Below are positions 1-13,271 of a DNA stretch of 13,271 bases, one piece after another. Both the position numbers and the translations under genes were made by a program. The stretch spans positions 1-13,271 of the forward strand of contig NW_021826348.1 in NCBI RefSeq assembly GCF_006345805.1. Reading direction: 5' to 3'. Source of the DNA: Octopus sinensis. Lineage: Eukaryota. The notes beneath the pieces were generated by a model. That model ran no database searches. It was not told the origin of the DNA and worked only from the letters and a program-made list of their open reading frames with translations. Numbering within the stretch: the stretch's first letter is position 1; each line of letters begins with the position of its first letter.

Positions 1-69
1 CAAGGTGCCACGCAGTAGGACTGAACCCGCAACCATGTGGTTGGTTAGCAAGCTACTTAATCACACAGC
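1..69 (-). mobile_element. tRNA-derived SINE head (octopus OR-type/CORE-like), cut by window edge
   Basis: Reverse complement GCTGTGTGATTAAGTAGCTTGCTAACCAACCACATGGTTGCGGGTTCAGTCCTACTGCGTGGCACCTTG closely matches the head of the full SINE at 4190-4263; B-box-like GGTTCAGTCC at 19-28. Confidence 0.85.
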
Positions 70-102
70 GTGTGTATGTGTTGATATGCTGATGTAACTA
101 TG

Positions 103-247
103 TCGTTGAATCGGCACAATTGTTAAAGCATTAGAACGAAATGCTTCGTATTATTTGTTGTGATTCTCAGTATGGTGACTTCAAATCGCACCATACTCAA
201 CTTTGCCTTTCATCTTCTGGACGGGTGGGGGTGGGGGTCGATAATAA
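103..247 (+). mobile_element. Degenerate tRNA-derived SINE, same family as 1926-2113
   Basis: GGCACAATTGTTA..GAAATGCTT..TTCAAAT..ACTTTGCCTTTCATC..GGGGTCGATAA parallels the copy at 1926-2113; recognisable homology stops at the mariner MITE. Confidence 0.6.
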
Positions 248-249
248 TA

Positions 250-383
250 TAAGGTTGTCCCAAAAGTTCGTAGAAAGTCTTGGAAAATAATGGTCTTTAT
301 TTTGAGGAATAATTTTTGTTGTTTTACTTGGCGAGTAAAAATTCAATTTTCGCAAGTGTTTACGAACTTTTAGGACAACCTAA
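250..383. mobile_element. Tc1/mariner-type MITE (134 bp)
   Basis: 23-bp TIRs 250-272 (TAAGGTTGTCCCAAAAGTTCGTA) and 361-383 (rc TTAGGTTGTCCTAAAAGTTCGTA), 21/23 identical; TA on both flanks (248-249, 384-385); terminus resembles the mariner TTAGGTTG start. Confidence 0.85.
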
Positions 384-557
384 TATTACAATCATCGGCA
401 GTGGATTCTTGAAGCTGTTAGAAGTTCGCACCAGATGGGGCTGCAGTATGTGTTGCAGTTCTGTGTGTTCTGATAGTAACGCTATCGATTACTCTGGTGC
501 ATAGCTCTATTGGTTCCCGTTGGTGGCATTTCTTTAAAAAAAAAATAAAAACTATAT

Positions 558-892
558 TTACCATCAAGATGTAGGACAAGATACTTTGATAGCCTGGGCT
601 TCAGAGGCCCACAGCTCTTCAATATCCTCCCGAAGAACCTGAGGGACCTGCATGGGGTGGATGCGGATGTCTTTAAAGTAGGACTGGATCTCTTCCTGTC
701 AGGTGTCCCGGATGAACCAACTTCACGGCAGGAGGTGCAGATGAGGGCAGCTGCATCGAACTCCCTCATGCACCAAATGGCAATTGCTAAAATGCATTCG
801 TGAAGTAAAATCATGTAGCAACACCAAATGGCGGTGCCCCAGCATGGCCACAGCTCGTGAACTGAAACTAGATGAAATGAAATAAATAAATA
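558..892 (+). mobile_element. 5'-truncated CR1/L2-group LINE 3' end with target-site duplication
   Basis: 558-803 reads without stops as LPSRCRTRYFDSLGFRGPQLFNILPKNLRDLHGVDADVFKVGLDLFLSGVPDEPTSRQEVQMRAAASNSLMHQMAIAKMHS*, homologous to the C-terminus of the LINE at ~7680-7935; tail (GAAAT/AAAT)n; 10-bp TSD AAAACTATAT at 548-557 and 893-902. Confidence 0.9.
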
Positions 893-966
893 AAAACTAT
901 ATCCGGCGTAGAGAGAGGAGACTTATATAACTGCACTTCTTCCTCATAATATTTTACCGAATCCGG

Positions 967-984
967 CACACACACACATACACA

Positions 985-1033
<49 letters not shown>

Positions 1034-1061
1034 AACACACATACACACACTCACACACACG
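967..1061. repeat. Imperfect (CA)n microsatellite
   Basis: Direct inspection. Confidence 0.95.
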
Positions 1062-1230
1062 CATATTGTATAATTATATGCATAATTATAACAAGAGATC
1101 GGCTTTACACCTCGCCCCGCACTGCAAGAAATAGACTCTAAAGCTCCTATTGCCACCTTAAAATCTCCGAGAATAATACACTATATTGTAGGCAAGCAAA
1201 AGAAAAATAATGACTCTACAAGGTTGGTTA

Positions 1231-1298
1231 ACTGTGTTTACGATCGAATTTCAAGCTTAAAGTAAAAATATTTTACCTACTGCTCTCATCAGCACAGT
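1231..1298 (-). ncRNA. Minimal type I hammerhead ribozyme motif, partly decayed
   Basis: Minus strand: ACTGTG-CTGATGA-GAGC-(loop containing GTAAAA/TTTTAC hairpin)-GCTT-GAAA-TTCGATC-GTA-AA-CACAGT. Stem I ACTGTG/CACAGT, stem II GAGC/GCTT, near-palindromic stem III, GUA triplet; 2 extra nt before stem I. Confidence 0.65.
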
Positions 1299-1490
1299 AC
1301 TCCGTAGGATAGATATACGAGTATCTCAAAATATGCATGCGATCGGCGACATCGCATGACCAGTATCCATCTACGCTCACAAAAATATACTCCCAAGTAT
1401 AATTCAAATATGTTCCTCTTCTACCCACGTGTAGGTGTGATAAGATCTAGACCGCAGTAAGTAAATACATTTTTGATTATGAGTAAATTT

Positions 1491-1610
1491 ATTCATATAT
1501 TAATTAAATAAAAGGGTAAAATCAATGATAATTTCACCAGGTATTTTCACACTGACTACCTGGTAAAATTATTATTGATTTTACGCTTTTATTATAATTG
1601 ATATTTGAAT
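1491..1610. repeat. Foldback palindrome, ~53-bp arms
   Basis: 1491-1543 is the approximate reverse complement of 1557-1610 (AAAAGGGTAAAATCAATGATAATTTCACCAGGTA / TACCTGGTAAAATTATTATTGATTTTACGCTTTT); 13-nt spacer; abuts (TA)n. Confidence 0.85.
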
Positions 1611-1672
1611 ATATATATATATATATATATCTATCTTATATATTTAAAAAAGGAGATGTGGAACCCGAGTTT

Positions 1673-1727
<55 letters not shown>
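1609..1727. repeat. Two (TA)n microsatellite tracts (1609-1630, 1676-1727)
   Basis: Direct inspection. Confidence 0.95.
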
Positions 1728-1835
1728 CATAATCAATATTGACTTACGAAGGTCTCACATATTTACAGGCAAGTATAATCTATATAGAATTGTTTTGTCT
1801 GTATGTAGGTATGTATGTTTGCTGTTCCTACTATT

Positions 1836-1887
1836 GATTTAGTTTCTGATGCGTCTTTGGACGAAACAAGATATATTTTAACGAATC
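1836..1887 (+). ncRNA. Degenerate hammerhead-like motif (core A9 to C)
   Basis: CTGATGC-GTC-TTTG-GAC-GAAA-CAAGATATATTT-TA at 1846-1880; 3-bp stem II; stem III is two changes from the palindrome CAAGATATCTTG; stem I pairing poor. Confidence 0.4.
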
Positions 1888-1925
1888 TGTGTACAATTAT
1901 ATTTCATATCTTCGGGGACAATCTT

Positions 1926-2113
1926 GGTGATGAGTTGGCAGAATCTTTAGCACACCCTACAAAATGCTTGACGGCACCTCGTCTGTCTTTACGTTCTGAG
2001 CTCAGATTCCACCGAGGTCGATTCTGCCTTTCGTCGGTGAATAAATTAAGTTCCAGTAGAACACTGGTGTTGATGCAATATCAAGGCTTGTGCATAATAT
2101 AATAGAAAGGATA
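1926..2113 (+). mobile_element. tRNA-derived SINE (central domain resembles Meta-type SINEs, from memory)
   Basis: A-box-like TGGCAGAATC, B-box-like GAGCTCAGATTCC, then CCGAGGTCGATTCTGCCTTTC..ATAAATTAAGTTCCAGT; related copy at 103-247. Confidence 0.75.
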
Positions 2114-2939: not shown

Positions 2940-3235
2940 AAGTAATCCCTCGACTATCGCGGGTGTTACGTTCCAAAACCCCTGCGATAGGTAGAAATCC
3001 ACGAAGTGCTGTATTGTATATTTCTTAAAATTATTTTTATAATTTGTATTTATTTATTTTATCATAAATGCAAAACAACACCACGGAGGAATCGACGTAA
3101 GCTTAAATAATAAACCGCGATAGGTGAACATGATAGGTGAGCCGCGATAGGTGAACCGCGATAGGTGAACCGCGATTGGTTAACTGCGATAGGTGAACCG
3201 CAATCCGTGAACAACGATATGGCGAGAGGTTACTG
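2940..3235. mobile_element. Tigger/pogo-like MITE inserted in the NUMT
   Basis: TIR-like ends (C)AGTAATCCCTCGACTATCGCGG and rc CAGTAACCTCTCGCCATATCGTTG; CAGT-type termini typical of pogo/Tigger; flanks read CA rather than canonical TA. Confidence 0.8.
3115..3211. repeat. Seven ~14-bp tandem subterminal repeats CCGCGATAGGTGAA
   Basis: Units start at 3115, 3129, 3142, 3156, 3170, 3184, 3198; a related motif sits near the left end (CCTGCGATAGGTAGAA, 2981-2996). Confidence 0.9.
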
Positions 3236-3480: not shown

Positions 3481-3641
3481 AGATCACAGGAGAATGTTTG
3501 GACTTCAGTAAACACACAGACTGCCGTTTCTATGATTGTTTATATGCAAGGTTTCCTTGTGGTGTAAAAAAACTACCACAACATAGTGCACGTATGAGGT
3601 GTGAGGACGGAAAAAGAGGAGTCAACCATTTGAATCATAGG
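3481..3641 (+). CDS. STC: Internal coding exon of a stanniocalcin-like gene (equivalent to STC exon 2)
   Basis: Pyrimidine tract + TTTCAG acceptor (3480), donor AGG|GTAAGT (3642); 161 nt, phase 1 to 0; encodes (E)ITGECLDFSKHTDCRFYDCLYARFPCGVKKLPQHSARMRCEDGKRGVNHLNHR with a DC.FY.CL....PCG motif. Family-level call only, not orthology. Confidence 0.8.
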
Positions 3642-3811
3642 GTAAGTGGATAGTGCCAACTTCTGATTGCAAGCGCGCGTGAGAAATAAGAAAAGAAAAG
3701 TAGACAAAATAATGTAACTATGGTCTATCCATTGCACTTACTCAGCATTACCTGATACCTTTGGGTCTTACTGACACCATTACCTCTCATAACCTATATA
3801 TATATATATAC

Positions 3812-4263
3812 TATTACTCTTACTCTTTTACTTGTTTCAGTCATTTCACTGCGGCCATACTGGAGCACCGCCTTTCTAGTCGAGCAAATCGACCCCAGGA
3901 CTTATTCTTTGTAAGCCTAGTACTTATTCTATCGGTCTCTTTGCCGAACCGCTAAGTAACGGGGACGTAAACCACCCCCAACATCGGTTGTCAAGCGATG
4001 TTGGGGGACAAACCATAGAAAAACAAACACACACACCACACACACATACATATATATATATATGTATATATATAATATATATATATATATATAATATATA
4101 CGACAGGCTTCTTCAGTTTCCGTCTACCAAATCCACTCACCAGGATTTGGTCGGCCGAGGATGTATAGTAGAAGACACTTGCCCAAGCTGCAACGCAGTG
4201 GGACTGAACCTGGAACCGTGTGGGTTGGTAAGCAAGCTACTTACACACAGCCACTCCTGCGCC
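3812..4263 (-). mobile_element. Full-length tRNA-derived CORE-like SINE with internal (TA/TG)n and LINE-like tail
   Basis: Minus strand: GGCGCAGGAGTGGCTGTGTG head, GGTTCAGTCC B-box, CTTGGGCAAGTGTCTT core-like segment, microsatellite 4025-4100, 3' GGCGGTGCTCCAGTATGGCCGCAG..ACTGAAAC, (GAGTAA)-type tail; sits in a TA run. Confidence 0.9.
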
Positions 4264-4272
4264 TATATATAT

Positions 4273-4597
4273 AAATATTAGAAGAAAACCACCTTTTATC
4301 ATTCAAAATGAATAATTAAATTACACCATCTAGAAAATTACATATGATAGAAAAGTTAAAATTAAAATAACGATAAAAAGTAAAGATTAAGTAAATTACA
4401 AAAATAATATAATGTAAATAATAGGTGTTATATTATTACCTATTATATACATTATATTATTTTTGTAATTTACTTAATCTTTACTTTTTATTGTTATTTT
4501 AATTTTAACTTTTCTATTATATGTAATTTTCTAGATGGTGTAATTTAATTATTCATTTTGAATTGATAAAAGGTGTTTGTTTTTTTTTCTAATATTT
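4273..4597. repeat. Long near-perfect foldback palindrome (~155-bp arms, 11-nt loop)
   Basis: 4273-4426 versus 4438-4597; about 4 differences over the inner ~135 bp; (TA)n on both flanks. Confidence 0.95.
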
Positions 4598-4744
4598 TAT
4601 ATTTATATATATATATATTATATTGTGTGGAATTTGATTTAGTATTTCTAAATTGAATTCTTTTTCCCTGTAAGTTTGGATTTTATTCCCTCAAATAATA
4701 ATTATATATTTAAACCAAAACAAAACCAAAAGTTAAAAGAAGGG

Positions 4745-7700
4745 AAAAAGCGCACTGACCACTACTGAAAGACGGTATGGCCAGATGTGGTGCGCGGAAA
4801 CCCAACAGGTGGCCAGCTTCACCCAGATGTGAGAAAGGCGGCAGCTGAACAGCAGTCTTTTTTTGTGCATGGCACAAAAAATTGTTCAGCAGCTGACCTG
4901 GCTACAAGCACAAAGCTGGAACTACCACCACATAGGCCACCTCCAACAGATGCAGGATGGCCACCACAGACCAACACCAACACACACCACCACAAAAATA
5001 TTTCTACTGAATGTAGGAGGGCTGCTGCGCGGAAACTGTAAAAAGAAAATTCATTCCTTAGAGACCTTGTGACATGCAATCAAGCTATAGCATGGCACTC
5101 ACAGAACGCATCTTGAACCCGATATAGGTGATGCAGAAATACACATGCCGCAATATGCATTCATACGCACAGATAGAAAAGGGAGGAGCCATGGTGGAGT
5201 TGCAATGTACATCCGAGATGACCTCACGCCCCAGGTCCTGCTTCATATTCAAACTCAGTATGTGAAACTCAATTGTCACATAAGACACCTGAATATCGTC
5301 ATATGCACTACATATCGCCCCACCAGACGCCCCAAAACACTCAGGCATGTTTGAAGACTGCCTAACAAAATATGAGAAGTCCTCACCAACCTTGAACAGC
5401 ACAACAGTGTATTCTTCCTGGGTGACTTTAACCTCCCCAATGTGGAATGGCCTGGGGGGCAGATGCTCCCAGGGATGACACACCATCAGCAGGCACAGGT
5501 GGAGTCCCCTGCTCCATCTCACAATACCTCTTTCATGGAGCAAATAGTTCTGCAAACCAACAAGGGCAGATAATATACTGGATCTCTGCTTTACAAACAT
5601 ATGGATATTATCCATAATGTTAATGTGATGCCGACAATGATCTCGGATCACAACATATGAGCTGTCTATGTATGGAACAAAAGCCCCCCGCAGACACACA
5701 GCCTATACGAAGCACCCCACCATCTCTCCAACTTAAACTTTCATAAAGCCAACTGGAAGTCGATTGAGAAAGAGATCCTCAACAGGATTGGCCTGAATGT
5801 CTCTCCACACCGGACATAAACATGAAACACAAACACTTCATGTCCATAATACAAGCCATATGTGACAATATGTCCAATGTGCAGGGCCACACACACAAGA
5901 ATAAAACACAGATCCCTAGAGAAGGAGGATTCTTATGAGACGACGGACAAGGATTGCAAACCGCCTGAGCACACACAAAAGTGTGAGAAGTCTCGGCTCG
6001 AAAGAATGCTAATGGAAACTGAGAAAAGTCTACATCAGTCCCATGAAAAGGAGAGAGCAGATTAAAGAAGCTTGGGTAATAGAAAATATAAAATCAAACC
6101 CTAAAGCTTTCTTTAAGTTTGCCAAAGAGACAGCCACAGTGCACCAGATAATAGGACCTCTCTTCCAAAAATGGCTCTCTCACAGGAAATCCCACGAGGA
6201 TAAGTGAAATACTGAACGAACAGTTCCCAAAGTGTGTTCACTACAACCCTCTAGGACACAGGCAAGTAAACAACCCAGAAGACTTCTTTGCCACTTTACC
6301 AGCGGCCAAAGAGACAAAAATTGAGTACATCAACATCGAAGAAGATGATTCACACTAGCCATTGATGAGATTGACACAACTCAGCTGCTGGACCTGATGG
6401 ATTCCCAGCGATCCTTCTCAAATCGTGCAAAGAGCCCTTGCAAACCGCTACAGCTTCTTTTTCAGAGCTTTCTTGCAAGTGGTAAGCTCCCAGTCAAACT
6501 GAAAGAGGGGGTAATATGCCCTATCCATAAGGAGGAGCAGAGCAGATGCTAAAAATTATAGGCCTATCTCTCTGACCTCACACATCAGCAAAGTCATGAA
6601 CGAATAGTCCGTAAGAAACTAATCATGTTCCTTGAAGAAATGACTTCTGTCTGACACCCAGCATGGATTTCGACCAGGTAGAGGCTGCCTAACACAGCTC
6701 CTGCAGCACTATGACTGGGTGTTGAAACAGCTACTAATTGGCTCAAATGTGGATGTAATATTATCTTGACTTTGCAAAAGCCTTTGATAAAGTCGACCAT
6801 GGTATGATCTGTCATAAACTGCGTGGTCTCGGCAGGCGGGAAACTTGAGAGTGGCTGCACAACTTCCTAAAAGACAGAAAACAGGCAGTTGTGAGCAATG
6901 GCCACCTCCAGGAACGCAAATAACAAGCGGTGTCCCACAGGGCACTGTCTTGGGGCCACTGATTTCATTGGCCCTTTCAGACATGCCTTCAGTTGCTACG
7001 ATGACCACCCTTGCTAGCTATGCAGATGACACAAAGGTCTCCCACGCAATACAGAAACCCTGAAAAATATTGCGCATCTGCAACATGAGCTGGACACAAT
7101 ATACAGGTGGCTGAGGACAACAACATGCAGTTTAATGCAGGTAAGTTCCTCCAGGCCTGCGCTACTGGCACACAAAGGTAAATGCGTGAAGACTGGATAC
7201 ACTGGCCCAGGAAGAATTGCAATCCCTGAGTCAAAATCAGTGCGTGACCTGGGCATTGACATGAGCAATGATGCATCTTTCCAAATGCATATTGCTAATC
7301 TGGTGATAAAATGCAGACGGCTAGCTGGATGGATTCTCCGAACTTTCAGAACAAAGAGAAGGAGACACTGATGGTCCTATGGAAAACATTTGTCCTCAGC
7401 CGCTTGGACTACTGCTCCCAACTTTGGTCACCACACAATATAAACAAAACAGCAGAACTCGAAGCAACTCAGAGAAGCTAACACAAAGAAAATCGTCTCA
7501 TGCAAAATGTCAGCTACTGGGAAAGACTGAAGGTATTAAACCTCTTCTCCCTGGAGCGGAGGCGGGAGAGATATGCAGTAATATACATCTGGAAAATCCT
7601 GGAGGTCTTATCCCAAACTTTGGCATTCAAGTTACTCCAACCGCAGAACGGGGCGCCGCTGCGTGGTGCCAAGGATTCCAAATCACCATCAAAATACAGG

Positions 7701-8010
7701 TCCAGATACTGCAAAACAGCTTGGTTTCAGAGTGACCACAGCTTTTCAACATCCTCCCTAAATGCCTGAGAGACTACATGGTGTGGATGTGGTTTTCTTT
7801 TTAAACTAAACTGGATCCCTTCTTGTTGGGATTCCCAGATGAACCTACCTCACGACAGGAGACACGGATGCGGGCAGCAGCATCGAACTCCCTTGTTGAT
7901 CAGTGCCACGTATCAGAGGTGGATTCACAAACTAGTGTGCTCATTCAGCGGTGTTGCCCCAGCATGGCCGCGGCTTCGGGCTATAACATTTTTAAGGTTT
8001 AAGGATTTAA

Positions 8011-8014
<4 letters not shown>
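4745..8014 (+). mobile_element. CR1/L2-group non-LTR retrotransposon (LINE), multiply frameshifted; 5' boundary approximate
   Basis: APE and RT motifs in order; 3' UTR TGCCCCAGCATGGCCGCGGC (7955-7974); tail (TTTAAGGA)~3 running into (AT)n. Confidence 0.93.
5004..7935 (+). pseudogene. LINE ORF2: apurinic-like endonuclease + reverse transcriptase (frameshifted)
   Basis: LLNVGGL 5004, RTDR..GGVAMY ~5166-5210, GDFNLP 5421, LDLCF 5578, SDH 5643; NYRPISLTS ~6554, QHGFR ~6659, DFAKAFDKV ~6768, GVPQGTVLG ~6929, YADD 7019-7030, RDLG ~7243, SLERRR ~7548; stop TAG 7933-7935. Confidence 0.92.
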
Positions 8015-8077
<63 letters not shown>

Positions 8078-8140
8078 TGTTGTATGTATGTATGTATGTA
8101 TGTATTTATGTAATGTATATTAAGAGAGTGAGAGAGAGAG
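8013..8140. repeat. Compound (AT)n-(ATGT)n-(GA)n microsatellite
   Basis: Direct inspection. Confidence 0.95.
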
Positions 8141-8702
8141 TGATGTAAGAAAAATAGTGGAGAGGAGGGTGCCATGTTTTAATATTCTCTCTGCATTACA
8201 TTATAAACATCTTATTGCACTTTAATTTTCCAATAATCTAATCATTAGTGATAATGACAAATTACACTTTATTGAACAAGTAGGAGGCTTCTGATAATTA
8301 TTGAGTTTCGAAATAATACTATCGTCATAATCTAACAGTATATATTGCTGTATATTCACTTAGAATATTTCTTTCAGCATGGGCAAGTCACAACGAATTT
8401 GTATTCAACTGATGGCTCTAAACTATATAGACATGTTCCACATTCTAGACAGTACTTGCAAGAAAAAATTTGAAAATACCATAGAAAATATTGAAGAAAA
8501 TTAAAGTATCACAGCATATATATATATATATTATTATATATATATATATATATATATTGAAGTTATAAGAGATAATGATATCATTCAGACCCAAAGGTGT
8601 CAGGTAATGCTGAATAAGTGCTATAGAAAGACCATAGTTAAGTTCCAGATTCGGTAACATTGCGAATAAGGGGTTCAACGTTGGCTCTATGTCAGCGTGT
8701 GC

Positions 8703-8912
8703 ATATAAGAATTTTTTGCTTAATAAGATAAAAAAACCAAGGCTGTATAGATAGTAGAGCATTTATAGATAGAAAGTCTTACAGCTGTTTCTAGGATGAA
8801 GGGATATTACTAATAAATATCCTAGAAACAGCTGTAAGACCTTCTATCTATAAATGCTCTACTATCTATACAGCCTTGTTTTTTTATCGTATTACGCAAA
8901 AAATTATCATAT
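8703..8912. repeat. Foldback palindrome (~95-bp arms) with a hammerhead remnant at its centre
   Basis: 8703-8797 versus 8819-8912, one mismatch in the inner ~60 bp; centre reads GATGA-A-GGGATATT-actaata-AATATCCT-A-GAAAC-AGCT-GTA-AGAC (8795-8840); abuts (TA)n. Confidence 0.92.
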
Positions 8913-8921
8913 ATATATATA

Positions 8922-8969
<48 letters not shown>

Positions 8970-9147
8970 ATTATTTATTTATTTATTTTACTCGTAGCTA
9001 TTTAATTTCCCATCAGCAAGCATTCTCTGATGAAAGACCTCAATCCTATTTGTGAAGTATAATTTATACTATGTTTCGTAGTTTCGCATTGCAAGGCTTC
9101 TCCAAACTTTTAGAAAACCTATGGGCCACACATAAAGTTATTGTCAT

Positions 9148-9156
9148 ACACACACT

Positions 9157-9223
<67 letters not shown>
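9148..9223. repeat. (CA)n-(TA)n microsatellite
   Basis: Direct inspection. Confidence 0.95.
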
Positions 9224-9226
<3 letters not shown>

Positions 9227-9338
9227 TATTAATTTGAAAGAGACAAACTCCAATGTCAATAACACTTCTCGCCAAACCTGACACATAGGGCATATTTAAA
9301 CACAGAGCGCATATATAAGCCATTAGAAATGTGCGAAC

Positions 9339-9718
9339 AGTCTTCGTATTGGCGCGCCAAACTACCGGAAATAATTCTGCAGAAAATAATTCTCTGCAGT
9401 GAATTTTGCCGGTTAAGAGAACATAGTTATTTAAATTTAAGTTTAAAATAATAAGGGTGAAAAATTGAATATTAATTTGATTAATATCAATTTAAAACCA
9501 ATAGTCTGGCATATTGCAAAATCTGAAGATTCATAAAAATTATATTACGTACATATAAGAGGGATGACCACTAAGTGGACATTCATTATGATAGAAATAG
9601 ACCCCCCCCCATGGTCTTACCACTAAGAAAGGATTGTTCTCAAAAAAATTTAGCAAACTGCAAAGAATTATTTTCTGCAGAATTATTTCCGGTATTTTGG
9701 CGCGCCAAAATGAAGACT
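9339..9718. mobile_element. Unclassified MITE with ~60-bp TIRs
   Basis: AGTCTTCGTATTGGCGCGCCAAACTACCGGAAATAATTCTGCAGAAAATAATTCTCTGCAG (9339-9399) mirrors 9658-9718; no TSD evident. Confidence 0.85.
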
Positions 9719-9819
9719 TTTTAAAGATAACTCCAACCGTAATTGGTAGAACTCTATACCTGTTCAATCTCATGCGGACGTCTCGTGTATAGTTCTCCAA
9801 ATTATATTTTGCTATGACG

Positions 9820-9891
9820 ATCACACTGATGAGTTGCGGACAATTACGTAAGTAATTACATAAGTGGTAACAACGAAATCGCATTTGTGAT
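9820..9891 (+). ncRNA. Minimal type I hammerhead ribozyme, catalytic core intact
   Basis: ATCACA (9820-9825) / CTGATGA (9826-9832) / GTTG..CAAC stem II (9833-9836 with 9871-9874), enclosing AATTAC-GTAA-GTAATT / GAAA (9875-9878) / T-CGC-A-T-T (AUU triplet) / TGTGAT (9886-9891). Confidence 0.8.
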
Positions 9892-10518
9892 TAATCATTA
9901 TATTTTGTATCTTTTCATTTGTCTTGCTCTCTTACGCTCTGGCGTTTGCTAAATTTTCTTGAGTAGGGATCTACTTCTAGCATAATGGATGTTCAATTAG
10001 TGATCATCTCTCTTATATGTATATATATATGTGTGTGTGTGTGTGTGTGAAATTCAGAGATTATGTTAACCTCATGAAGAGATGGTGTCATATATATATG
10101 TATTCCAATGTGCGGATATATACTCCTCATACAGGGTTGAAAACGACCTATGGTTAGTATATCCAATATCTACGAGAAAATCTCATCGATATAAATGGAT
10201 ATATTAAAAATACATACACATACATATATTAGTAAAATATATAGACATACAAATTTATAGTGTTTGTATTGTTTTATTTTTATTTATTTTTTATCTATGA
10301 TTATACAATCTGTTTTTAAAATCCCAACCTAATAACATGTAACTATTTGACCGTGTTGAGATTTTACTCATATTATATTCTAAACGCAAATTTTATTTTA
10401 TTTATAAATTTGTAATGTGTGAAGTTGAAGCAAATTGGACGTATTTTTATTTTCATTAACCATCTGTTAATAAATTAATTTTGTATCTATATACTCTCAA
10501 CTTTCTTCTTGTATTCAC

Positions 10519-10695
10519 ATTGTATATATATATACAAATACACACAAACACACATGTATATATATATATATATATATATATCTATATATATATATATATA
10601 TATATACATGTGTGTCTGTGTGTATGTGTATATATATATATATATGCACATACAGACACATATGTGTATACATATATATGTATGTGTGTGTGTGT
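10519..10695. repeat. Compound (TA)/(CA)/(TG) microsatellite
   Basis: Direct inspection; source of several low-complexity ORFs in the track. Confidence 0.95.
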
Positions 10696-10714
10696 ATTAG
10701 TGAACAAGTAAGAT

Positions 10715-10747
10715 AAACTGGCTCTTAACATAATTAAGAGCCAGTTT
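10715..10747. repeat. Perfect 14-bp inverted repeat, 5-nt loop
   Basis: AAACTGGCTCTTAA-CATAA-TTAAGAGCCAGTTT. Confidence 0.9.
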
Positions 10748-11038
10748 CTTTTGAGATATTTATCCTCGAAGATAATTACATAAACATGCACAAAACCACA
10801 TCCACGTAAAGATGTCAAACATACTCACGGACATTAAATCAGACAAAACGACTTTACTCGTTCCTGTGCTTGTATGTGTCTCCGTGTATCAATAAGGGTG
10901 TACATACTTACACACATAGATATATATATCATATTTTCCTTTCGAAATCCACTCCCCATGGCCCCAGTTCACCAACCAACTCTCTGTAACATCTTCCCCA
11001 ACACAGCCGTAAATTTACACATCACCCATGTACTCTAT

Positions 11039-11140
11039 ACACGCGCACGCGCACGTGCACACACACACACAAACACACACATGCACTCACTCACACACAC
11101 ACGCACATACAGAAACACACACGCGTGCGCATACGCAAAC
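11039..11140. repeat. Imperfect (CA)/(CG) microsatellite
   Basis: Direct inspection. Confidence 0.9.
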
Positions 11141-11203
11141 ATGTAGCCTTAAAAATAAAATTCACATTATACACGCAAATATACATATATTCGTACTTAC
11201 ATA

Positions 11204-11622
11204 TCTTTATATATAAAAGTGAAGTTGTGTGTCTGTATCCTACGATTTAGATTCCTAACTACTCCCACATTTTGCGGTGCAGTTTAACCAAAACCGGCTA
11301 TCTTATAGTCGTGATTCATATCGAGCCCTTCTGGGTATTAGCGCGCGTCTACGATGAGTCTACGATTTAAAAAATAATTTACCATCATTTAAAAAATAAT
11401 TTACCATCATTTTTTCCCATTCTAATGCATTTTTTCGCTATTATATAAGGGAAGTAACTCTCTAAAAATGTCTACGATGAGTCAACGATTTAAAAAAAAA
11501 TTTACCATCAGTTTTTTTCCATTTTTAATGCATTTTTTTGCTATTTTTTGGCTATAACTCTCTAAAAATGCTTTATAGTTATTTCCCCTACAAACCCGAG
11601 CAACGCCGGGCGATACTGCTAA
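11204..11622 (+). mobile_element. Non-autonomous Helitron, copy 2 (different 5' end, internal duplication)
   Basis: A|TCTTTATATATAAAAG start; CCCG-AGCAACGC-CGGG hairpin then CTAA|T; last ~130 bp match 2538-2658; duplicated TCTACGATGAGTC..TAACTCTCTAAAAATG block (~11348-11470 and 11471-11570). Confidence 0.85.
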
Positions 11623-12152
11623 TACTACATAATATAACAAGCACACACAAACAAGTACTAGCACGTGCGTACACAGCATGCATATGGCCATGCTCTCACA
11701 TCCATCCGGTAACCCACAAAATTACTAATCTACACATTTCATACACATAGTCATGCCTAAAAAAAAACCGGTAAACGTGCGCTCATGCATATACTAACAC
11801 GTGCACAGACAAACTTTTAATCTTATATTTGCACTTCTATGTCAGAAAACCATATCCAACCACATCCTTCATTTTCATAGCAGTGAATGGCCAGCTTAAA
11901 AAGTAGCGCCATTGGTGCCTTTTCGCCTTGATTAAACTTATTATATTTTAGAGTTTTCCAAGTCTTTCCGCCTCTCTTTCAAATCTGCACTATATTCTAA
12001 AGAGGATCATCCACGAAATACTTTAGTTAACTCTTTACAGTTTAGAAATATTCACAACAAACTATTCCGTCAATATAGGCGCCTAAAACATCTAGCGAAA
12101 GTTTGAAACCCTCTGCCAAATCATACGAATTCTGAATGGCAGCTAAGTATTA

Positions 12153-12581
12153 TCTCTCTCTATATAAACGGCAGTTTGTCTGTCTGTGTGTCTGTGTGTC
12201 TGTCAGGTTGTACCCTCACCCTGACCACGGCTTTCAACCGATTCTGATGAAACTTGACACACACATAGCCCAATGTCATAATTCAAAACTAATGCAGCCA
12301 AAATTTTGAAAAGTTCCCCCAGTTCTGAAAAGAATCGATAAATTCGACATGGGGTCGAGAATCTAAGCTTTTTATATGCAACACATTTTCTGTCTTGGGG
12401 ATACAACTCGACAGCTAGGGACAGCTAGGAACATCGTATACACAGAAGTATTCGAGTGAAGAGAAGACATTGCAACGTACACATGCGCCTTCGTTCCCTA
12501 GAGGGAAAGGACTAGATTGGGATTAGTCGTTGCCTACTAGGGGCTCTTACATACCCGGGCAACGCCGGCTTATGCTGCTAG
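12153..12581 (+). mobile_element. Non-autonomous Helitron, copy 3 (different 3' end)
   Basis: A|TCTCTCTCTATATAAACGGCAG start, near-identical to 2273-2483 up to 12363; 3' CCCGGGCAACGCCGG..CTAG|T. Confidence 0.85.
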
Positions 12582-12667
12582 TTTTTCATAAATTATTATG
12601 AACAGAAAAACAATAATCCATCAAAATCTTTTCTTTTTTTTTTACTAACAACTGCCAAATTTTACAG

Positions 12668-12894
12668 GATAAGAAATGGATGTATAGAATAATGAAATGC
12701 ATCATGGATGTGATGACAAATATCTACAAAAGTAAAAGAGTCAACTGCGAATATGCTGTTGAAATTGTACTCGAGGTAGAATCAGGATGTTATGTGAAAA
12801 ATGGTTTATGCACGGTCGGCTGGCATCGCCGCTATTCTATAAAGAGTTCATTCGAGGAACGCATGAAGCAACCAAACAACTATATTGTTAAGGC
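12668..12894 (+). CDS. STC: Internal coding exon of a stanniocalcin-like gene (equivalent to STC exon 3)
   Basis: TTTTACAG acceptor (12667), donor GC|GTAAGT (12895); 227 nt, phase 0 to 2, no stops; DKKWMYRIMKCIMDVMTNIYKSKRVNCEYAVEIVLEVESGCYVKNGLCTVGWHRR..; C-x15-C-x13-CY-x5-C spacing equals STC1 C98/C114/C128/C135 as recalled. Confidence 0.82.
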
Positions 12895-13124
12895 GTAAGT
12901 ATCCGTTGTTGTGTTTGATGTTGGTGGCGATATTGATAGTCAGGGAGGAACATTCATTATTGGTGGGGGGGGGGGTTACTGGGTTACCACAAACAACAAA
13001 TATACATGTGCGAACACATGTGGACAGCGTTGTTCTGGCGAGCAAAATATGCAATGTCTCTGCCCAGCTGAACAGGATACAGTACTGTACCTCTTTTTGT
13101 GTAATGAAGAACTCCTCACTGCAC

Positions 13125-13130
<6 letters not shown>

Positions 13131-13186
<56 letters not shown>
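13131..13186. repeat. (TG)n microsatellite
   Basis: Direct inspection. Confidence 0.97.
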
Positions 13187-13189
<3 letters not shown>

Positions 13190-13271
13190 GCATTCGCAGC
13201 TGTTACATGTGCCTAATTTAAGCAAGATTTGGCTGCTATTTCCAGAAGAGACTAGTGATCATACAAAGCTT

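What the first reader, a model, noticed from the sequence alone, without database searches (positions are those of the whole stretch)
3481..12894. Hidden stanniocalcin-like gene split by a 9 kb transposon-filled intron
Seen: two exons with canonical splice sites join in frame (AGG|GAT) to give ECL-x-C-x4-C-x6-C-x13-C-x23-KCI-C-x13-CY-x5-C, nine cysteines in all (C-x7-C-x4-C-x6-C-x13-C-x23-C-x15-C-x13-C-x5-C). Recalled: STC1 has C45-x8-C54-x4-C59-x5-C65-x8-C74-x23-C98-x15-C114-x13-C128-x6-C135 counting the Tyr, i.e. the same CYxxxxxC unit. STC1 exon 2 is phase 1 to 0, and exon 3 starts 10 residues before C98 and ends in phase 2, all reproduced here. The peptide mixes invertebrate/fungal STC-like features (DC.FY.CL..PCG, KKW) with a vertebrate-like EVxxxCYxK, and lacks the usual GY..YG and SH motifs. 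Inference: a divergent secreted cephalopod stanniocalcin-family protein. The ORF track shows both pieces only as short anonymous ORFs.
Basis: partly seen in the sequence, partly recalled or inferred. Interest (0 to 1): 0.82.

Follow-up and report, generated by a model that had tools for sequence, protein, structure and literature searches.

The report
Unannotated fast-evolving octopus stanniocalcin-like gene
The two short reading frames are real, spliced exons of an unannotated octopus gene for a secreted stanniocalcin-like protein, one member of a large octopus-specific gene cluster whose protein-coding parts change far faster than the surrounding DNA.

Summary
Confirmed. Window 3481-3641 and 12668-12894 are exons 2 and 3 of a four-exon gene. 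An RNA-derived contig joins them exactly at 3641|12668 and leaves exon 3 at 12894.

The window is a whole unplaced 13.3 kb contig of the Octopus sinensis assembly. Exon 1, which encodes a signal peptide, lies on the overlapping contig C3336. Exon 4 is missing from the assembly.

All nine cysteines are invariant in at least 15 paralogues, mostly a tandem array at C25:23.4-24.0 Mb, and exon sizes and phases are the same. Stanniocalcin membership holds:
- Pfam PF03298 gives 19.6 bits for exon 3 alone, 27.5 for the O. bimaculoides orthologue and 50.2 for a paralogue.
- The family profile hits only human STC2 in the PDB (E 3e-13).
- The orthologue's model matches STC2 at Z about 10.

New here:
- The clade is octopod-specific.
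- Exon 3 evolves under strong positive selection (dN/dS 3.5-8.3) and is about twice as diverged as its flanking introns.

A 2026 preprint reports stanniocalcin mimics in octopus venom glands, so the kind is known. This gene is a new, unannotated member. Its tissue and function were not tested.

The parts
1..1990 (.). Overlap with the 3' end of unplaced contig C3336 (C3336:9927-11912). This joins the two contigs into one locus and places exon 1 (C3336:6342-6438) 6,964 nt upstream of exon 2.
   Evidence: blastn gives 99.05% identity over 1,997 nt, same orientation. Exon 1 was found.
3481..3641 (+). Coding exon 2 (161 nt, phase 1 to 0). It encodes 53 full codons carrying conserved cysteines 1-5 of the stanniocalcin core.
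   Evidence: AG/GT boundaries. Paralogues share the same size and phase. Five Cys are invariant in 10 copies. It is 64-68% identical to the O. bimaculoides orthologue's exon 2 copies. Its last 23 letters are fused to exon 3 in the X1 contig.
3642..12667 (+). Intron 2, 9,026 nt, GT...AG, rich in repeats.
   Evidence: Sequence. Microsatellites. Dispersed repeats matching several places in C3336 and C25. The intron is removed in the X1 contig.
5100..7800 (+). Young LINE-like retrotransposon copy inside intron 2. The true ends may lie beyond this range.
   Evidence: 8,085 first-look candidates in the genome. Of the 40 scored, most are 93-97% identical and many are 5'-truncated with a shared 3' end. 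ORF 6845-7063 has a weak RVT_1 match, E 0.0032.
12668..12894 (+). Coding exon 3 (227 nt, phase 0 to 2). It encodes 75 full codons carrying conserved cysteines 6-9.
   Evidence: AG/GT boundaries. PF03298 gives 19.6 bits, E 6.5e-4, profile positions 86-138. 224/227 nt with the same phases in 15 copies. W, 4 Cys, Y, G, W and R are invariant. The X1 contig lies on 12667-12894 only; X3 holds the exon with its intron flanks as genomic DNA.
12895..13271 (+). First 377 nt of intron 3. The contig ends here, just after a (TG)28 microsatellite at 13132-13187. Exon 4 is not in the window.
   Evidence: Donor gtaagt at 12895. Microsatellite. No exon 4 match in the window and none in the assembly that can be assigned to this gene.

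Best explanation
The window holds exons 2 and 3 of an expressed, four-exon gene for a protein of about 195 residues with a signal peptide and the ten-cysteine helical stanniocalcin fold. The gene is split over two overlapping unplaced contigs of the Octopus sinensis assembly (C3336 and C2819). It probably belongs at or near the 100-N gap at C25:23709341-23709440, inside a tandem array of at least 15 stanniocalcin-like genes. It is the counterpart of O. bimaculoides LOC128250809. Its clade is octopod-specific, distinct from the conserved invertebrate STC gene on contig C9. The clade has lost the GY..G..YC loop between cysteines 4 and 5, and it has neither the cysteine that vertebrate STCs use to dimerise nor STC2's Cys120. 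Shown: the exon structure, the splicing of exons 2-3 and out of exon 3, family membership, the fold (on the orthologue), and strong positive selection on exon 3 with the disulfide scaffold kept intact. Inferred: the protein is secreted and acts as an extracellular binder whose surface is being diversified against a changing target. The most likely role is as one of the stanniocalcin mimics reported from octopus posterior salivary (venom) glands. I put an exocrine or antagonistic role at about 0.5 and endogenous signalling at about 0.3.
For: - Exons: splice sites, frame and cysteines.
- Paralogues: exon 2/exon 3 pairs lie in the same order and strand, 4-17 kb apart, with identical phases.
- RNA: the 359-nt X1 contig consists of 23 nt of exon 2, then exon 3, then 108 further letters, while X3 shows the unspliced genomic form. 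Only two genomic places match exon 3, so a retrocopy is unlikely.
- Exon 1: a hydrophobic N-terminus and a phase-1 donor lie on C3336, which overlaps window 1-1990 at 99%.
- Genome identity: P0003 is O. sinensis XP_036369332.1 on a 28,926,792-nt contig, the same length as C25.
- Orthologue: the P0049 locus is collinear with the merged contigs through exons and introns at 80-90% identity.
- Family membership: PF03298 gives 50.2, 27.5 and 19.6 bits, and 36 of 48 distant hits carry it. The window's two exon peptides, joined with an X, score 76.2 bits against an HMM of 15 non-octopus STC-like proteins, against 11.2 for the best of 2,000 shuffles.
- Link to vertebrate STC: the family profile hits only human STC2, E 3e-13, with identical Cys spacing at six of eight intervals.
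- Fold: AF2 model pLDDT 86; STC2 chains rank 1-4 with Z 9.8-10.1, and the next hit has Z 6.2.
- Selection on exon 3: dN/dS is 4.05 against the O. bimaculoides orthologue (p 0.007; 3.9 and p 0.011 with one codon dropped to fit L019), 8.3 against paralogue L019 (p 5e-4), and 3.5 for L019 against O. bimaculoides. Exon identity is 74% against 87-92% for the flanks (p 5.6e-6).
- Clade: the tree separates an octopod-specific clade with 100/99 support.
- Venom link: preprint 10.64898/2026.02.02.703354 reports stanniocalcin 'doppelganger toxins' (superfamily SF5) in octopus posterior salivary glands.
Against: - RNA support is a single low-depth contig (2.9) from one run whose RNA status is a guess and whose tissue is unknown.
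- The exon 1-exon 2 junction has not been seen in RNA.
- Exon 4, and so the tenth cysteine and the stop codon, is absent from the assembly, so an intact full-length ORF is not shown for this copy.
- The window's own exon 3 is below Pfam's cut-off (19.6 against 23), and exon 2 alone gives no Pfam hit.
- The structure was predicted for the 54-68% identical orthologue, not for this protein.
- It is not established that this clade is the preprint's SF5, because the supplement is not held.
- The dN/dS figures rest on about 40 synonymous sites, and one-to-one orthology is unresolved (open fork).
- High dN/dS would also fit immune or reproductive roles.
Confidence: 0.8

Rival explanations
1. It is an endogenous hormone-like or paracrine stanniocalcin, for example a regulator of ion balance or an inhibitor of the animal's own proteinases. 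It would have been duplicated for tissue-specific use and would not be a venom or other antagonistic factor.
For: It has the STC fold and cysteine scaffold. Vertebrate STCs are endogenous regulators and pappalysin inhibitors (PMC13675253 abstract). The tissue of run X1 is unknown.
Against: The conserved, slowly evolving STC-type gene is a different locus, on C9. Tandem expansion together with dN/dS of 3.5-8.3 and exons diverging faster than introns is unusual for an endogenous hormone. The six-frame search found no Peptidase_M43 (pappalysin) domain in this genome, though that result is weak. Invertebrate STCs lack Cys120 and are thought unlikely to bind invertebrate PAPP-A (PMC11925022).
Confidence: 0.3
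2. It is a decaying or truncated gene copy. On this view the unplaced contig carries a partial duplicate without a working 3' end, and the high dN/dS reflects relaxed constraint.
For: Exon 4 is not found in the window or assignable elsewhere. The window has the longest terminal branch in its subclade, 0.44. RNA depth is low.
Against: Both exons are open over 128 codons. All nine Cys and the other invariant residues are kept. dN/dS well above 1, and dN 3-4 times the intron divergence, exceeds what neutrality gives. The X1 contig is spliced onward from 12894 into 108 further letters, enough for an exon 4 of the size seen in the orthologue. The exon is also kept in a second organism label, X3, at 97% identity.
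Confidence: 0.07
3. The two reading frames are chance ORFs with chance splice signals, and the cysteine pattern is coincidental.
For: Each ORF is short (75 and 72 aa in the mechanical list), and exon 2 alone has no Pfam hit.
Against: The same two exons recur in order at 10 or more loci with invariant cysteines. They match annotated proteins of three octopus species. They score 76 bits against distant relatives, compared with 11 for shuffles. They are spliced together in an RNA-derived contig.
Confidence: 0.01

Closest known systems
Octopus bimaculoides LOC128250809 (XP_052832735.1, 196 aa, 'uncharacterized protein')
   Same: Same four-exon layout, with introns collinear at 80-90% identity. Same signal-peptide start (MLK.F), the same nine cysteines in exons 2-3, and PF03298 above the cut-off at 27.5 bits.
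   Different: Only 64-68% (exon 2) and 53% (exon 3) amino-acid identity, although synonymous divergence is about 8%. The O. bimaculoides locus has two tandem exon 1 + exon 2 cassettes ahead of one exon 3/4; the O. sinensis locus shows one cassette and a LINE-filled intron instead.
Human stanniocalcin-2 / stanniocalcin-1 (PDB 8a7e, 8a7d, 7y5q, 8hgh)
   Same: Secreted ten-cysteine helical protein. Cysteine spacing is identical at C1-C2 (8), C2-C3 (4), C5-C6 (23), C6-C7 (15), C7-C8 (13) and C8-C9 (6). Profile E 3e-13. Fold Z about 10 over 151-152 residues.
   Different: About 15% identity. The C4-C5 loop is 13 residues rather than 8. There is no counterpart of STC2 Cys120. There is no C-terminal dimerising cysteine and no long C-terminal tail in the orthologue or paralogues. 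There is no N-glycosylation sequon in exons 2-3. It is a member of a multi-gene tandem array rather than one of two genes.
Invertebrate stanniocalcin homologues (Roch and Sherwood 2011, PMC5654410; e.g. oyster K1PDI7 'Stanniocalcin-2'; O. sinensis locus on C9)
   Same: Ten-cysteine pattern, signal peptide, 150-300 residues. BLASTP against oyster K1PDI7 gives 26.7% identity over 131 residues, E 1e-14.
   Different: The conserved clade keeps a GY....G..YC segment between cysteines 4 and 5 (the stretch where Roch and Sherwood note a hydrophobic region). The window's clade has replaced it with a charged, variable loop. The two clades separate with 100/99 support.
Cephalopod 'stanniocalcin doppelganger toxins', superfamily SF5 (bioRxiv 10.64898/2026.02.02.703354)
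   Same: Octopus proteins with a signal peptide, STC cysteine pattern and a predicted STC2-like structure.
   Different: Those were defined by high expression in posterior salivary glands. The tissue of this gene is unknown and the published sequences could not be compared. That text does not describe a genomic array or selection for SF5.

Membership tests
Stanniocalcin family (Pfam PF03298) | Match to the family HMM above the gathering score of 23 bits | tested here: inconclusive
   For the window, exon 3 alone scores 19.6 bits (E 6.5e-4) and exon 2 alone gives no hit. The joined peptide was not sent to Pfam. At family level the feature is met: orthologue P0049 27.5 bits, same-genome paralogue P0003 50.2 bits, 11 paralogous exon 3 copies at 25.7-35.5 bits, and 36 of 48 distant hits positive. 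The window's two peptides joined with an X score 76.2 bits against an HMM of 15 non-octopus STC-likes.
Stanniocalcin family (criteria of Roch and Sherwood 2011) | Conserved pattern of ten cysteines | tested here: inconclusive
   Nine of the ten are present, with STC2-identical spacing at six intervals. The tenth lies on exon 4, which is not in the assembly. It is present in the orthologue and in paralogues.
Stanniocalcin family (criteria of Roch and Sherwood 2011) | N-terminal signal peptide (secreted) | tested here: inconclusive
   Exon 1 on C3336:6342-6438 starts with Met-Leu-Lys, followed by 12 hydrophobic residues and then Thr-Glu-Gly. Its donor phase fits exon 2. No signal-peptide predictor was run, and the exon 1-exon 2 junction was not seen in RNA.
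Stanniocalcin family (criteria of Roch and Sherwood 2011) | Length 150-300 residues | not testable with these tools
   The orthologue is 196 aa and paralogue P0003 is 195 aa. The window gene's own length cannot be stated without exon 4.
Stanniocalcin family | STC fold (disulfide-stapled helical bundle as in solved STC2) | tested here: met
   Tested on the orthologue P0049. The AF2 model has pLDDT 86. STC2 chains rank 1-4 in Foldseek with probability 0.96-1.0 and in VIA-align with Z 9.8-10.1, rmsd 3.7-3.9 A over 151-152 residues; the next hit has Z 6.2.
Vertebrate STC1/STC2 subfamily | Eleventh cysteine for covalent homodimer; STC2 Cys120 for covalent PAPP-A inhibition; conserved N-glycosylation site | tested here: not met
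   There is no cysteine at the STC2 Cys120 column. Exon 4 of the orthologue and paralogues has a single cysteine. There is no N-x-S/T sequon in the window's two exons.
Cephalopod SF5 stanniocalcin 'doppelganger toxins' | High expression in posterior salivary gland, and sequence membership of the published superfamily | not testable with these tools
   The tissue of run X1 is coded. The one read-laying run was used. The preprint's sequence files are not held.

The most novel reading that the evidence does not exclude
Octopods have turned the ancient stanniocalcin hormone fold into a hyperdiversifying secreted arsenal. This is a tandem array of at least 15 genes in which very recent duplicates (the window and L019, about 5% synonymous divergence) already differ at roughly half the residues of exon 3 while keeping every disulfide. 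That is exon-focused accelerated evolution of the kind known from cone-snail and snake toxins, here applied to a hormone mimic aimed at prey physiology.
Probability: 0.35. Interest if true: 0.7.

Novelty: new member of a known kind. Interest (0 to 1): 0.5.

Why it matters
The result adds an expressed gene that the Octopus sinensis assembly fragments across two unplaced contigs and that no protein record in the searched collections represents. It also shows where the gene probably belongs, at a scaffold gap inside the stanniocalcin-like array.

More broadly, the octopus stanniocalcin-like genes carried in databases as 'uncharacterized' form an octopod-specific, tandemly expanded clade under strong diversifying selection. 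That gives independent genomic support to the recent proposal that octopus venom glands secrete stanniocalcin mimics. It also offers a tractable family for asking what stanniocalcins bind, since no receptor for them had been identified (Roch and Sherwood 2011).

Tried and rejected
- Pfam on exon 2 alone gave no hit.
- tblastn of eight family proteins against the window found only exons 2 and 3, so exons 1 and 4 are not in the window.
- A genome-wide search with the orthologue's exon 4 found only the paralogues' exon 4 copies, none assignable to this gene.
- The haplotig idea (the window as an allele of the C25 copy L019) was rejected. Identity is only 74-78%, and the exon differs far more than the flanks.
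- A retrocopy as the source of the spliced contig was rejected, because exon 3 DNA matches only two genomic places, both with intron flanks.
- The preprint's supplements are not held.
- A full-text search for the RefSeq gene and protein ids found no paper.
- A six-frame search of the genome for the pappalysin catalytic domain PF05572 found nothing at E <= 0.001. This is inconclusive for an intron-split gene.
- The word-index search with the orthologue found only two O. bimaculoides clusters.
- I did not send a typed joined peptide to Pfam or to the structure tool. Because the family may be a venom component, exon peptides were joined only with an X at the junction inside scripts.
Full report
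**What is in the window**

- Exon 2, 3481-3641 (161 nt), follows tttcag and is followed by gtaagt.
- Exon 3, 12668-12894 (227 nt), follows ttttacag and is followed by gtaagt.
- Read in the open frames, they encode 53 and 75 full codons, join in phase 0 (AGG|GAT) and carry five and four cysteines.
Corrected, those intervals fit stanniocalcin better.

**Not chance**

A six-frame search of the window's own genome with the Pfam Stanniocalcin model found 17 exon-sized matches, 11 of them above the family cut-off. Thirteen lie within C25:23.40-23.98 Mb. A search with the exon 2 peptide found 12 matches. These pair with the exon 3 matches in the same order and on the same strand, 4-17 kb apart.

In all copies exon 2 is 158 or 161 nt with phase 1 to 0, and exon 3 is 224 or 227 nt with phase 0 to 2, each with AG/GT boundaries. 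All nine cysteines are invariant, together with a handful of other residues.

**RNA evidence**

Three public runs hold exon 3. When they were laid on window 12300-13271, run X1 gave a 359-nt contig.
- Letters 24-251 of that contig lie on 12667-12894.
- The 23 letters before that are exactly the last letters of exon 2 (window 3619-3641).
- The remaining 108 letters lie on nothing in the window.

Run X3, from another organism label, gave a 313-nt contig running straight through the exon and both intron flanks, which is genomic DNA. Exon 3 DNA has only two places in the assembly, both with intron flanks. The joined form is therefore best read as spliced mRNA, not a retrocopy.

This confirms the 3641|12668 junction and use of the 12894 donor. 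The support is thin: one contig, depth 2.9, unknown tissue, from a run whose RNA status is the tool's guess.

**The rest of the gene**

The window is the whole of contig C2819 in a 2.72 Gb assembly. That assembly is Octopus sinensis: a paralogue in the array is identical to XP_036369332.1 of that species, on a contig of 28,926,792 nt, which is the length of C25.

- Full-length relatives show four coding exons. Exon 1 carries a signal peptide and a short linker. Exons 2 and 3 are as above. Exon 4 has about 32 codons and the tenth cysteine.
- Neither exon 1 nor exon 4 is in the window.
- Exon 1 is on another unplaced contig, at C3336:6342-6438. It has a hydrophobic N-terminus and a phase-1 donor that fits exon 2.
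- The last 1,986 nt of C3336 overlap window 1-1990 at 99% identity, so the two contigs form one locus with a 6,964-nt first intron.
- Exon 4 could not be found for this gene. The contig ends 377 nt into intron 3, just past a (TG)28 run.
- The nearest paralogue (L019, exon 3 at C25:23709626-23709849, with its exon 4 near 23712524) begins immediately after a 100-N scaffold gap at C25:23709341-23709440 and lacks its own exons 1 and 2. This is the likely home of the unplaced contigs. That placement is an inference.

**The intron**

Intron 2 is 9,026 nt. Positions 5100-7800 are a young dispersed repeat.
- There are 8,085 first-look candidates, and most of the 40 scored copies are 93-97% identical.
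- Many are 5'-truncated onto a common 3' end.
- A weak reverse-transcriptase match lies on the + strand.

This is a LINE-like element. The rest of the intron has microsatellites and other repeats. 'Transposon-filled' is fair.

**Family membership**

- The window's exon 3 alone matches PF03298 at 19.6 bits (E 6.5e-4, cut-off 23), and exon 2 alone gives nothing.
- An exhaustive profile search with 13 exon 3 peptides found 48 proteins, 36 of which carry PF03298.
- The same-genome paralogue scores 50.2 bits and the closest full-length relative, O. bimaculoides LOC128250809 (P0049), scores 27.5 bits.
- The window's two peptides, joined with an X, score 76.2 bits against an HMM built from 15 non-octopus relatives. 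The best of 2,000 shuffles scores 11.2. BLASTP against an oyster protein that UniProt names Stanniocalcin-2 gives E 1e-14.
- A profile of 23 family members hits only human STC2 among all PDB sequences (E 3e-13). Cysteine spacing is identical at six of eight intervals, and no residue matches STC2 Cys120.
- The AlphaFold model of P0049 (pLDDT 86) matches the four STC2 chains first in Foldseek (probability 0.96-1.0, TM about 0.5). In VIA-align it matches them at Z 9.8-10.1, rmsd 3.7-3.9 A over 151-152 residues, with the next hit at Z 6.2.

By the published criteria of ten cysteines, a signal peptide and 150-300 residues (PMC5654410), the family qualifies. For this copy the tenth cysteine and the length remain unseen.

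**Which stanniocalcin**

A tree separates two clades with 100/99 support.
- One is a conserved clade holding oyster, annelid and Argonauta sequences, plus a transcript-derived protein (P0017) that resembles the O. sinensis locus on C9.
- The other is an octopod-only clade holding the C25 array.

Within the octopod clade, the window groups (100/99) with L019 and O. bimaculoides LOC128250809 and LOC106876190. The expanded clade has replaced the conserved GY....G..YC segment between cysteines 4 and 5 with a variable charged loop.

The O. bimaculoides locus is collinear with the merged O. sinensis contigs through exons and introns. It carries two tandem exon 1 + exon 2 cassettes ahead of one exon 3/4.

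**Selection**

Exon 3 evolves much faster than its surroundings.

| Comparison (exon 3) | dN | dS | dN/dS | Fisher p |
|---|---|---|---|---|
| Window vs O. bimaculoides | 0.34 | 0.084 | 4.05 | 0.007 |
| Window vs L019 | 0.39 | 0.047 | 8.3 | 5e-4 |
| L019 vs O. bimaculoides | 0.38 | 0.108 | 3.5 | 0.0095 |

(. For the first pair, dropping one codon to fit L019 gives 3.9 and p 0.011.)

- Between the window and L019 the exon is 74% identical, while the flanking introns are 87-92% identical (p 5.6e-6).
- Against O. bimaculoides, both exons are about twice as diverged as their flanks (p about 0.006-0.007).
- The three listed differences in the X1 contig are all non-synonymous. Four of the six exon differences in X3 are non-synonymous.
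- Across older paralogue pairs the whole-exon dN/dS is 0.6-1.3.
- Cysteines never change.

The synonymous site count is small (about 40) and orthology within the four-member subclade is unresolved. The direction and size of the effect are still consistent in all three comparisons.

**How it probably works**

Shown: a secreted-type precursor gene, an STC fold, an intact scaffold and a fast-changing surface. Inferred: an extracellular binding protein engaged with a changing target.

A February 2026 preprint reports stanniocalcin 'doppelganger toxins' (superfamily SF5) among highly expressed secreted proteins of octopus posterior salivary glands. It cites O. bimaculoides and Hapalochlaena sequences and an STC2-like predicted structure. 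Tandem expansion and exon-focused positive selection are what one expects of such a family, so this is my leading reading, at about 0.5. An endogenous signalling role (about 0.3) is not excluded. The tissue is unknown, and I could not compare sequences with SF5.

The proteins lack the vertebrate dimerising cysteine and STC2 Cys120. If they act on pappalysin-type proteinases, it would be non-covalently. No pappalysin catalytic domain turned up in the octopus genome, but that search is weak for an intron-split gene.

**Novelty**

The kind is known: invertebrate stanniocalcins since 2011, and octopus salivary STC mimics since 2026. Relatives are in RefSeq as 'uncharacterized'.

This particular gene appears unannotated. 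No O. sinensis protein for it was found among the 48 representatives, or by the word search with its orthologue. As far as the held literature shows, the tandem array, its restriction to octopods and the strength of selection are not described.

Noticed in passing
G000:C25:23400000-24020000 (loci L001-L011, L015, L019, L021-L030): A tandem array of at least 15 stanniocalcin-like genes on both strands, including near-identical recent duplicates (L001/L002, L008/L009, L003/L004). Two further copies lie on unplaced contig C9781, and the conserved-type gene is at C9:61.92-61.94 Mb.
   Followed up: partly
G000:C25:23709341-23709440 (in L019 and L050): A 100-N scaffold gap sits directly upstream of a paralogue that has only exons 3 and 4. 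The first 100 nt after the gap are 94% identical to window 12054-12153. This is the likely site where contigs C3336 and C2819 belong.
   Followed up: partly
L051 (O. bimaculoides CM046625.1:11314269-11352209), positions 1469-1576, 9905-10069, 21175-21282 and 25982-26146: The orthologous locus carries two tandem copies of the exon 1 + exon 2 cassette ahead of a single exon 3 and exon 4. RefSeq isoform X2 starts inside the first cassette's exon 2. These may be alternative 5' cassettes, or the remnant of a gene whose 3' half was deleted.
   Followed up: partly
L022/L023 (C25:23410060 and 23456729) with L008/L009: Two duplicated genes have identical exon 3 sequences, but their exon 2 copies differ by nine non-synonymous and no synonymous changes.
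   Followed up: no
P0014 (Branchiostoma floridae, 660 aa), P0012/P0013, P0008, P0018, P0028: The exon 3 profile also hits long proteins with two to five stanniocalcin-like stretches. One is an amphioxus protein annotated with a phospholipase A2-like domain. These could be fusions, tandem-domain proteins or merged gene models.
   Followed up: no
window 3113-3212: A 14-nt tandem repeat (7.2 copies, consensus AACCGCGATAGGTG) lies about 270 nt upstream of exon 2. Window 3800-4270 is a dispersed repeat with several copies in C3336 and C25.
   Followed up: no
window 12300-12600: Very high contig depth in all four runs, including X1 and X4. This marks the stretch just upstream of exon 3 as a high-copy repeat that is present in, and possibly transcribed in, those samples.
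   Followed up: no
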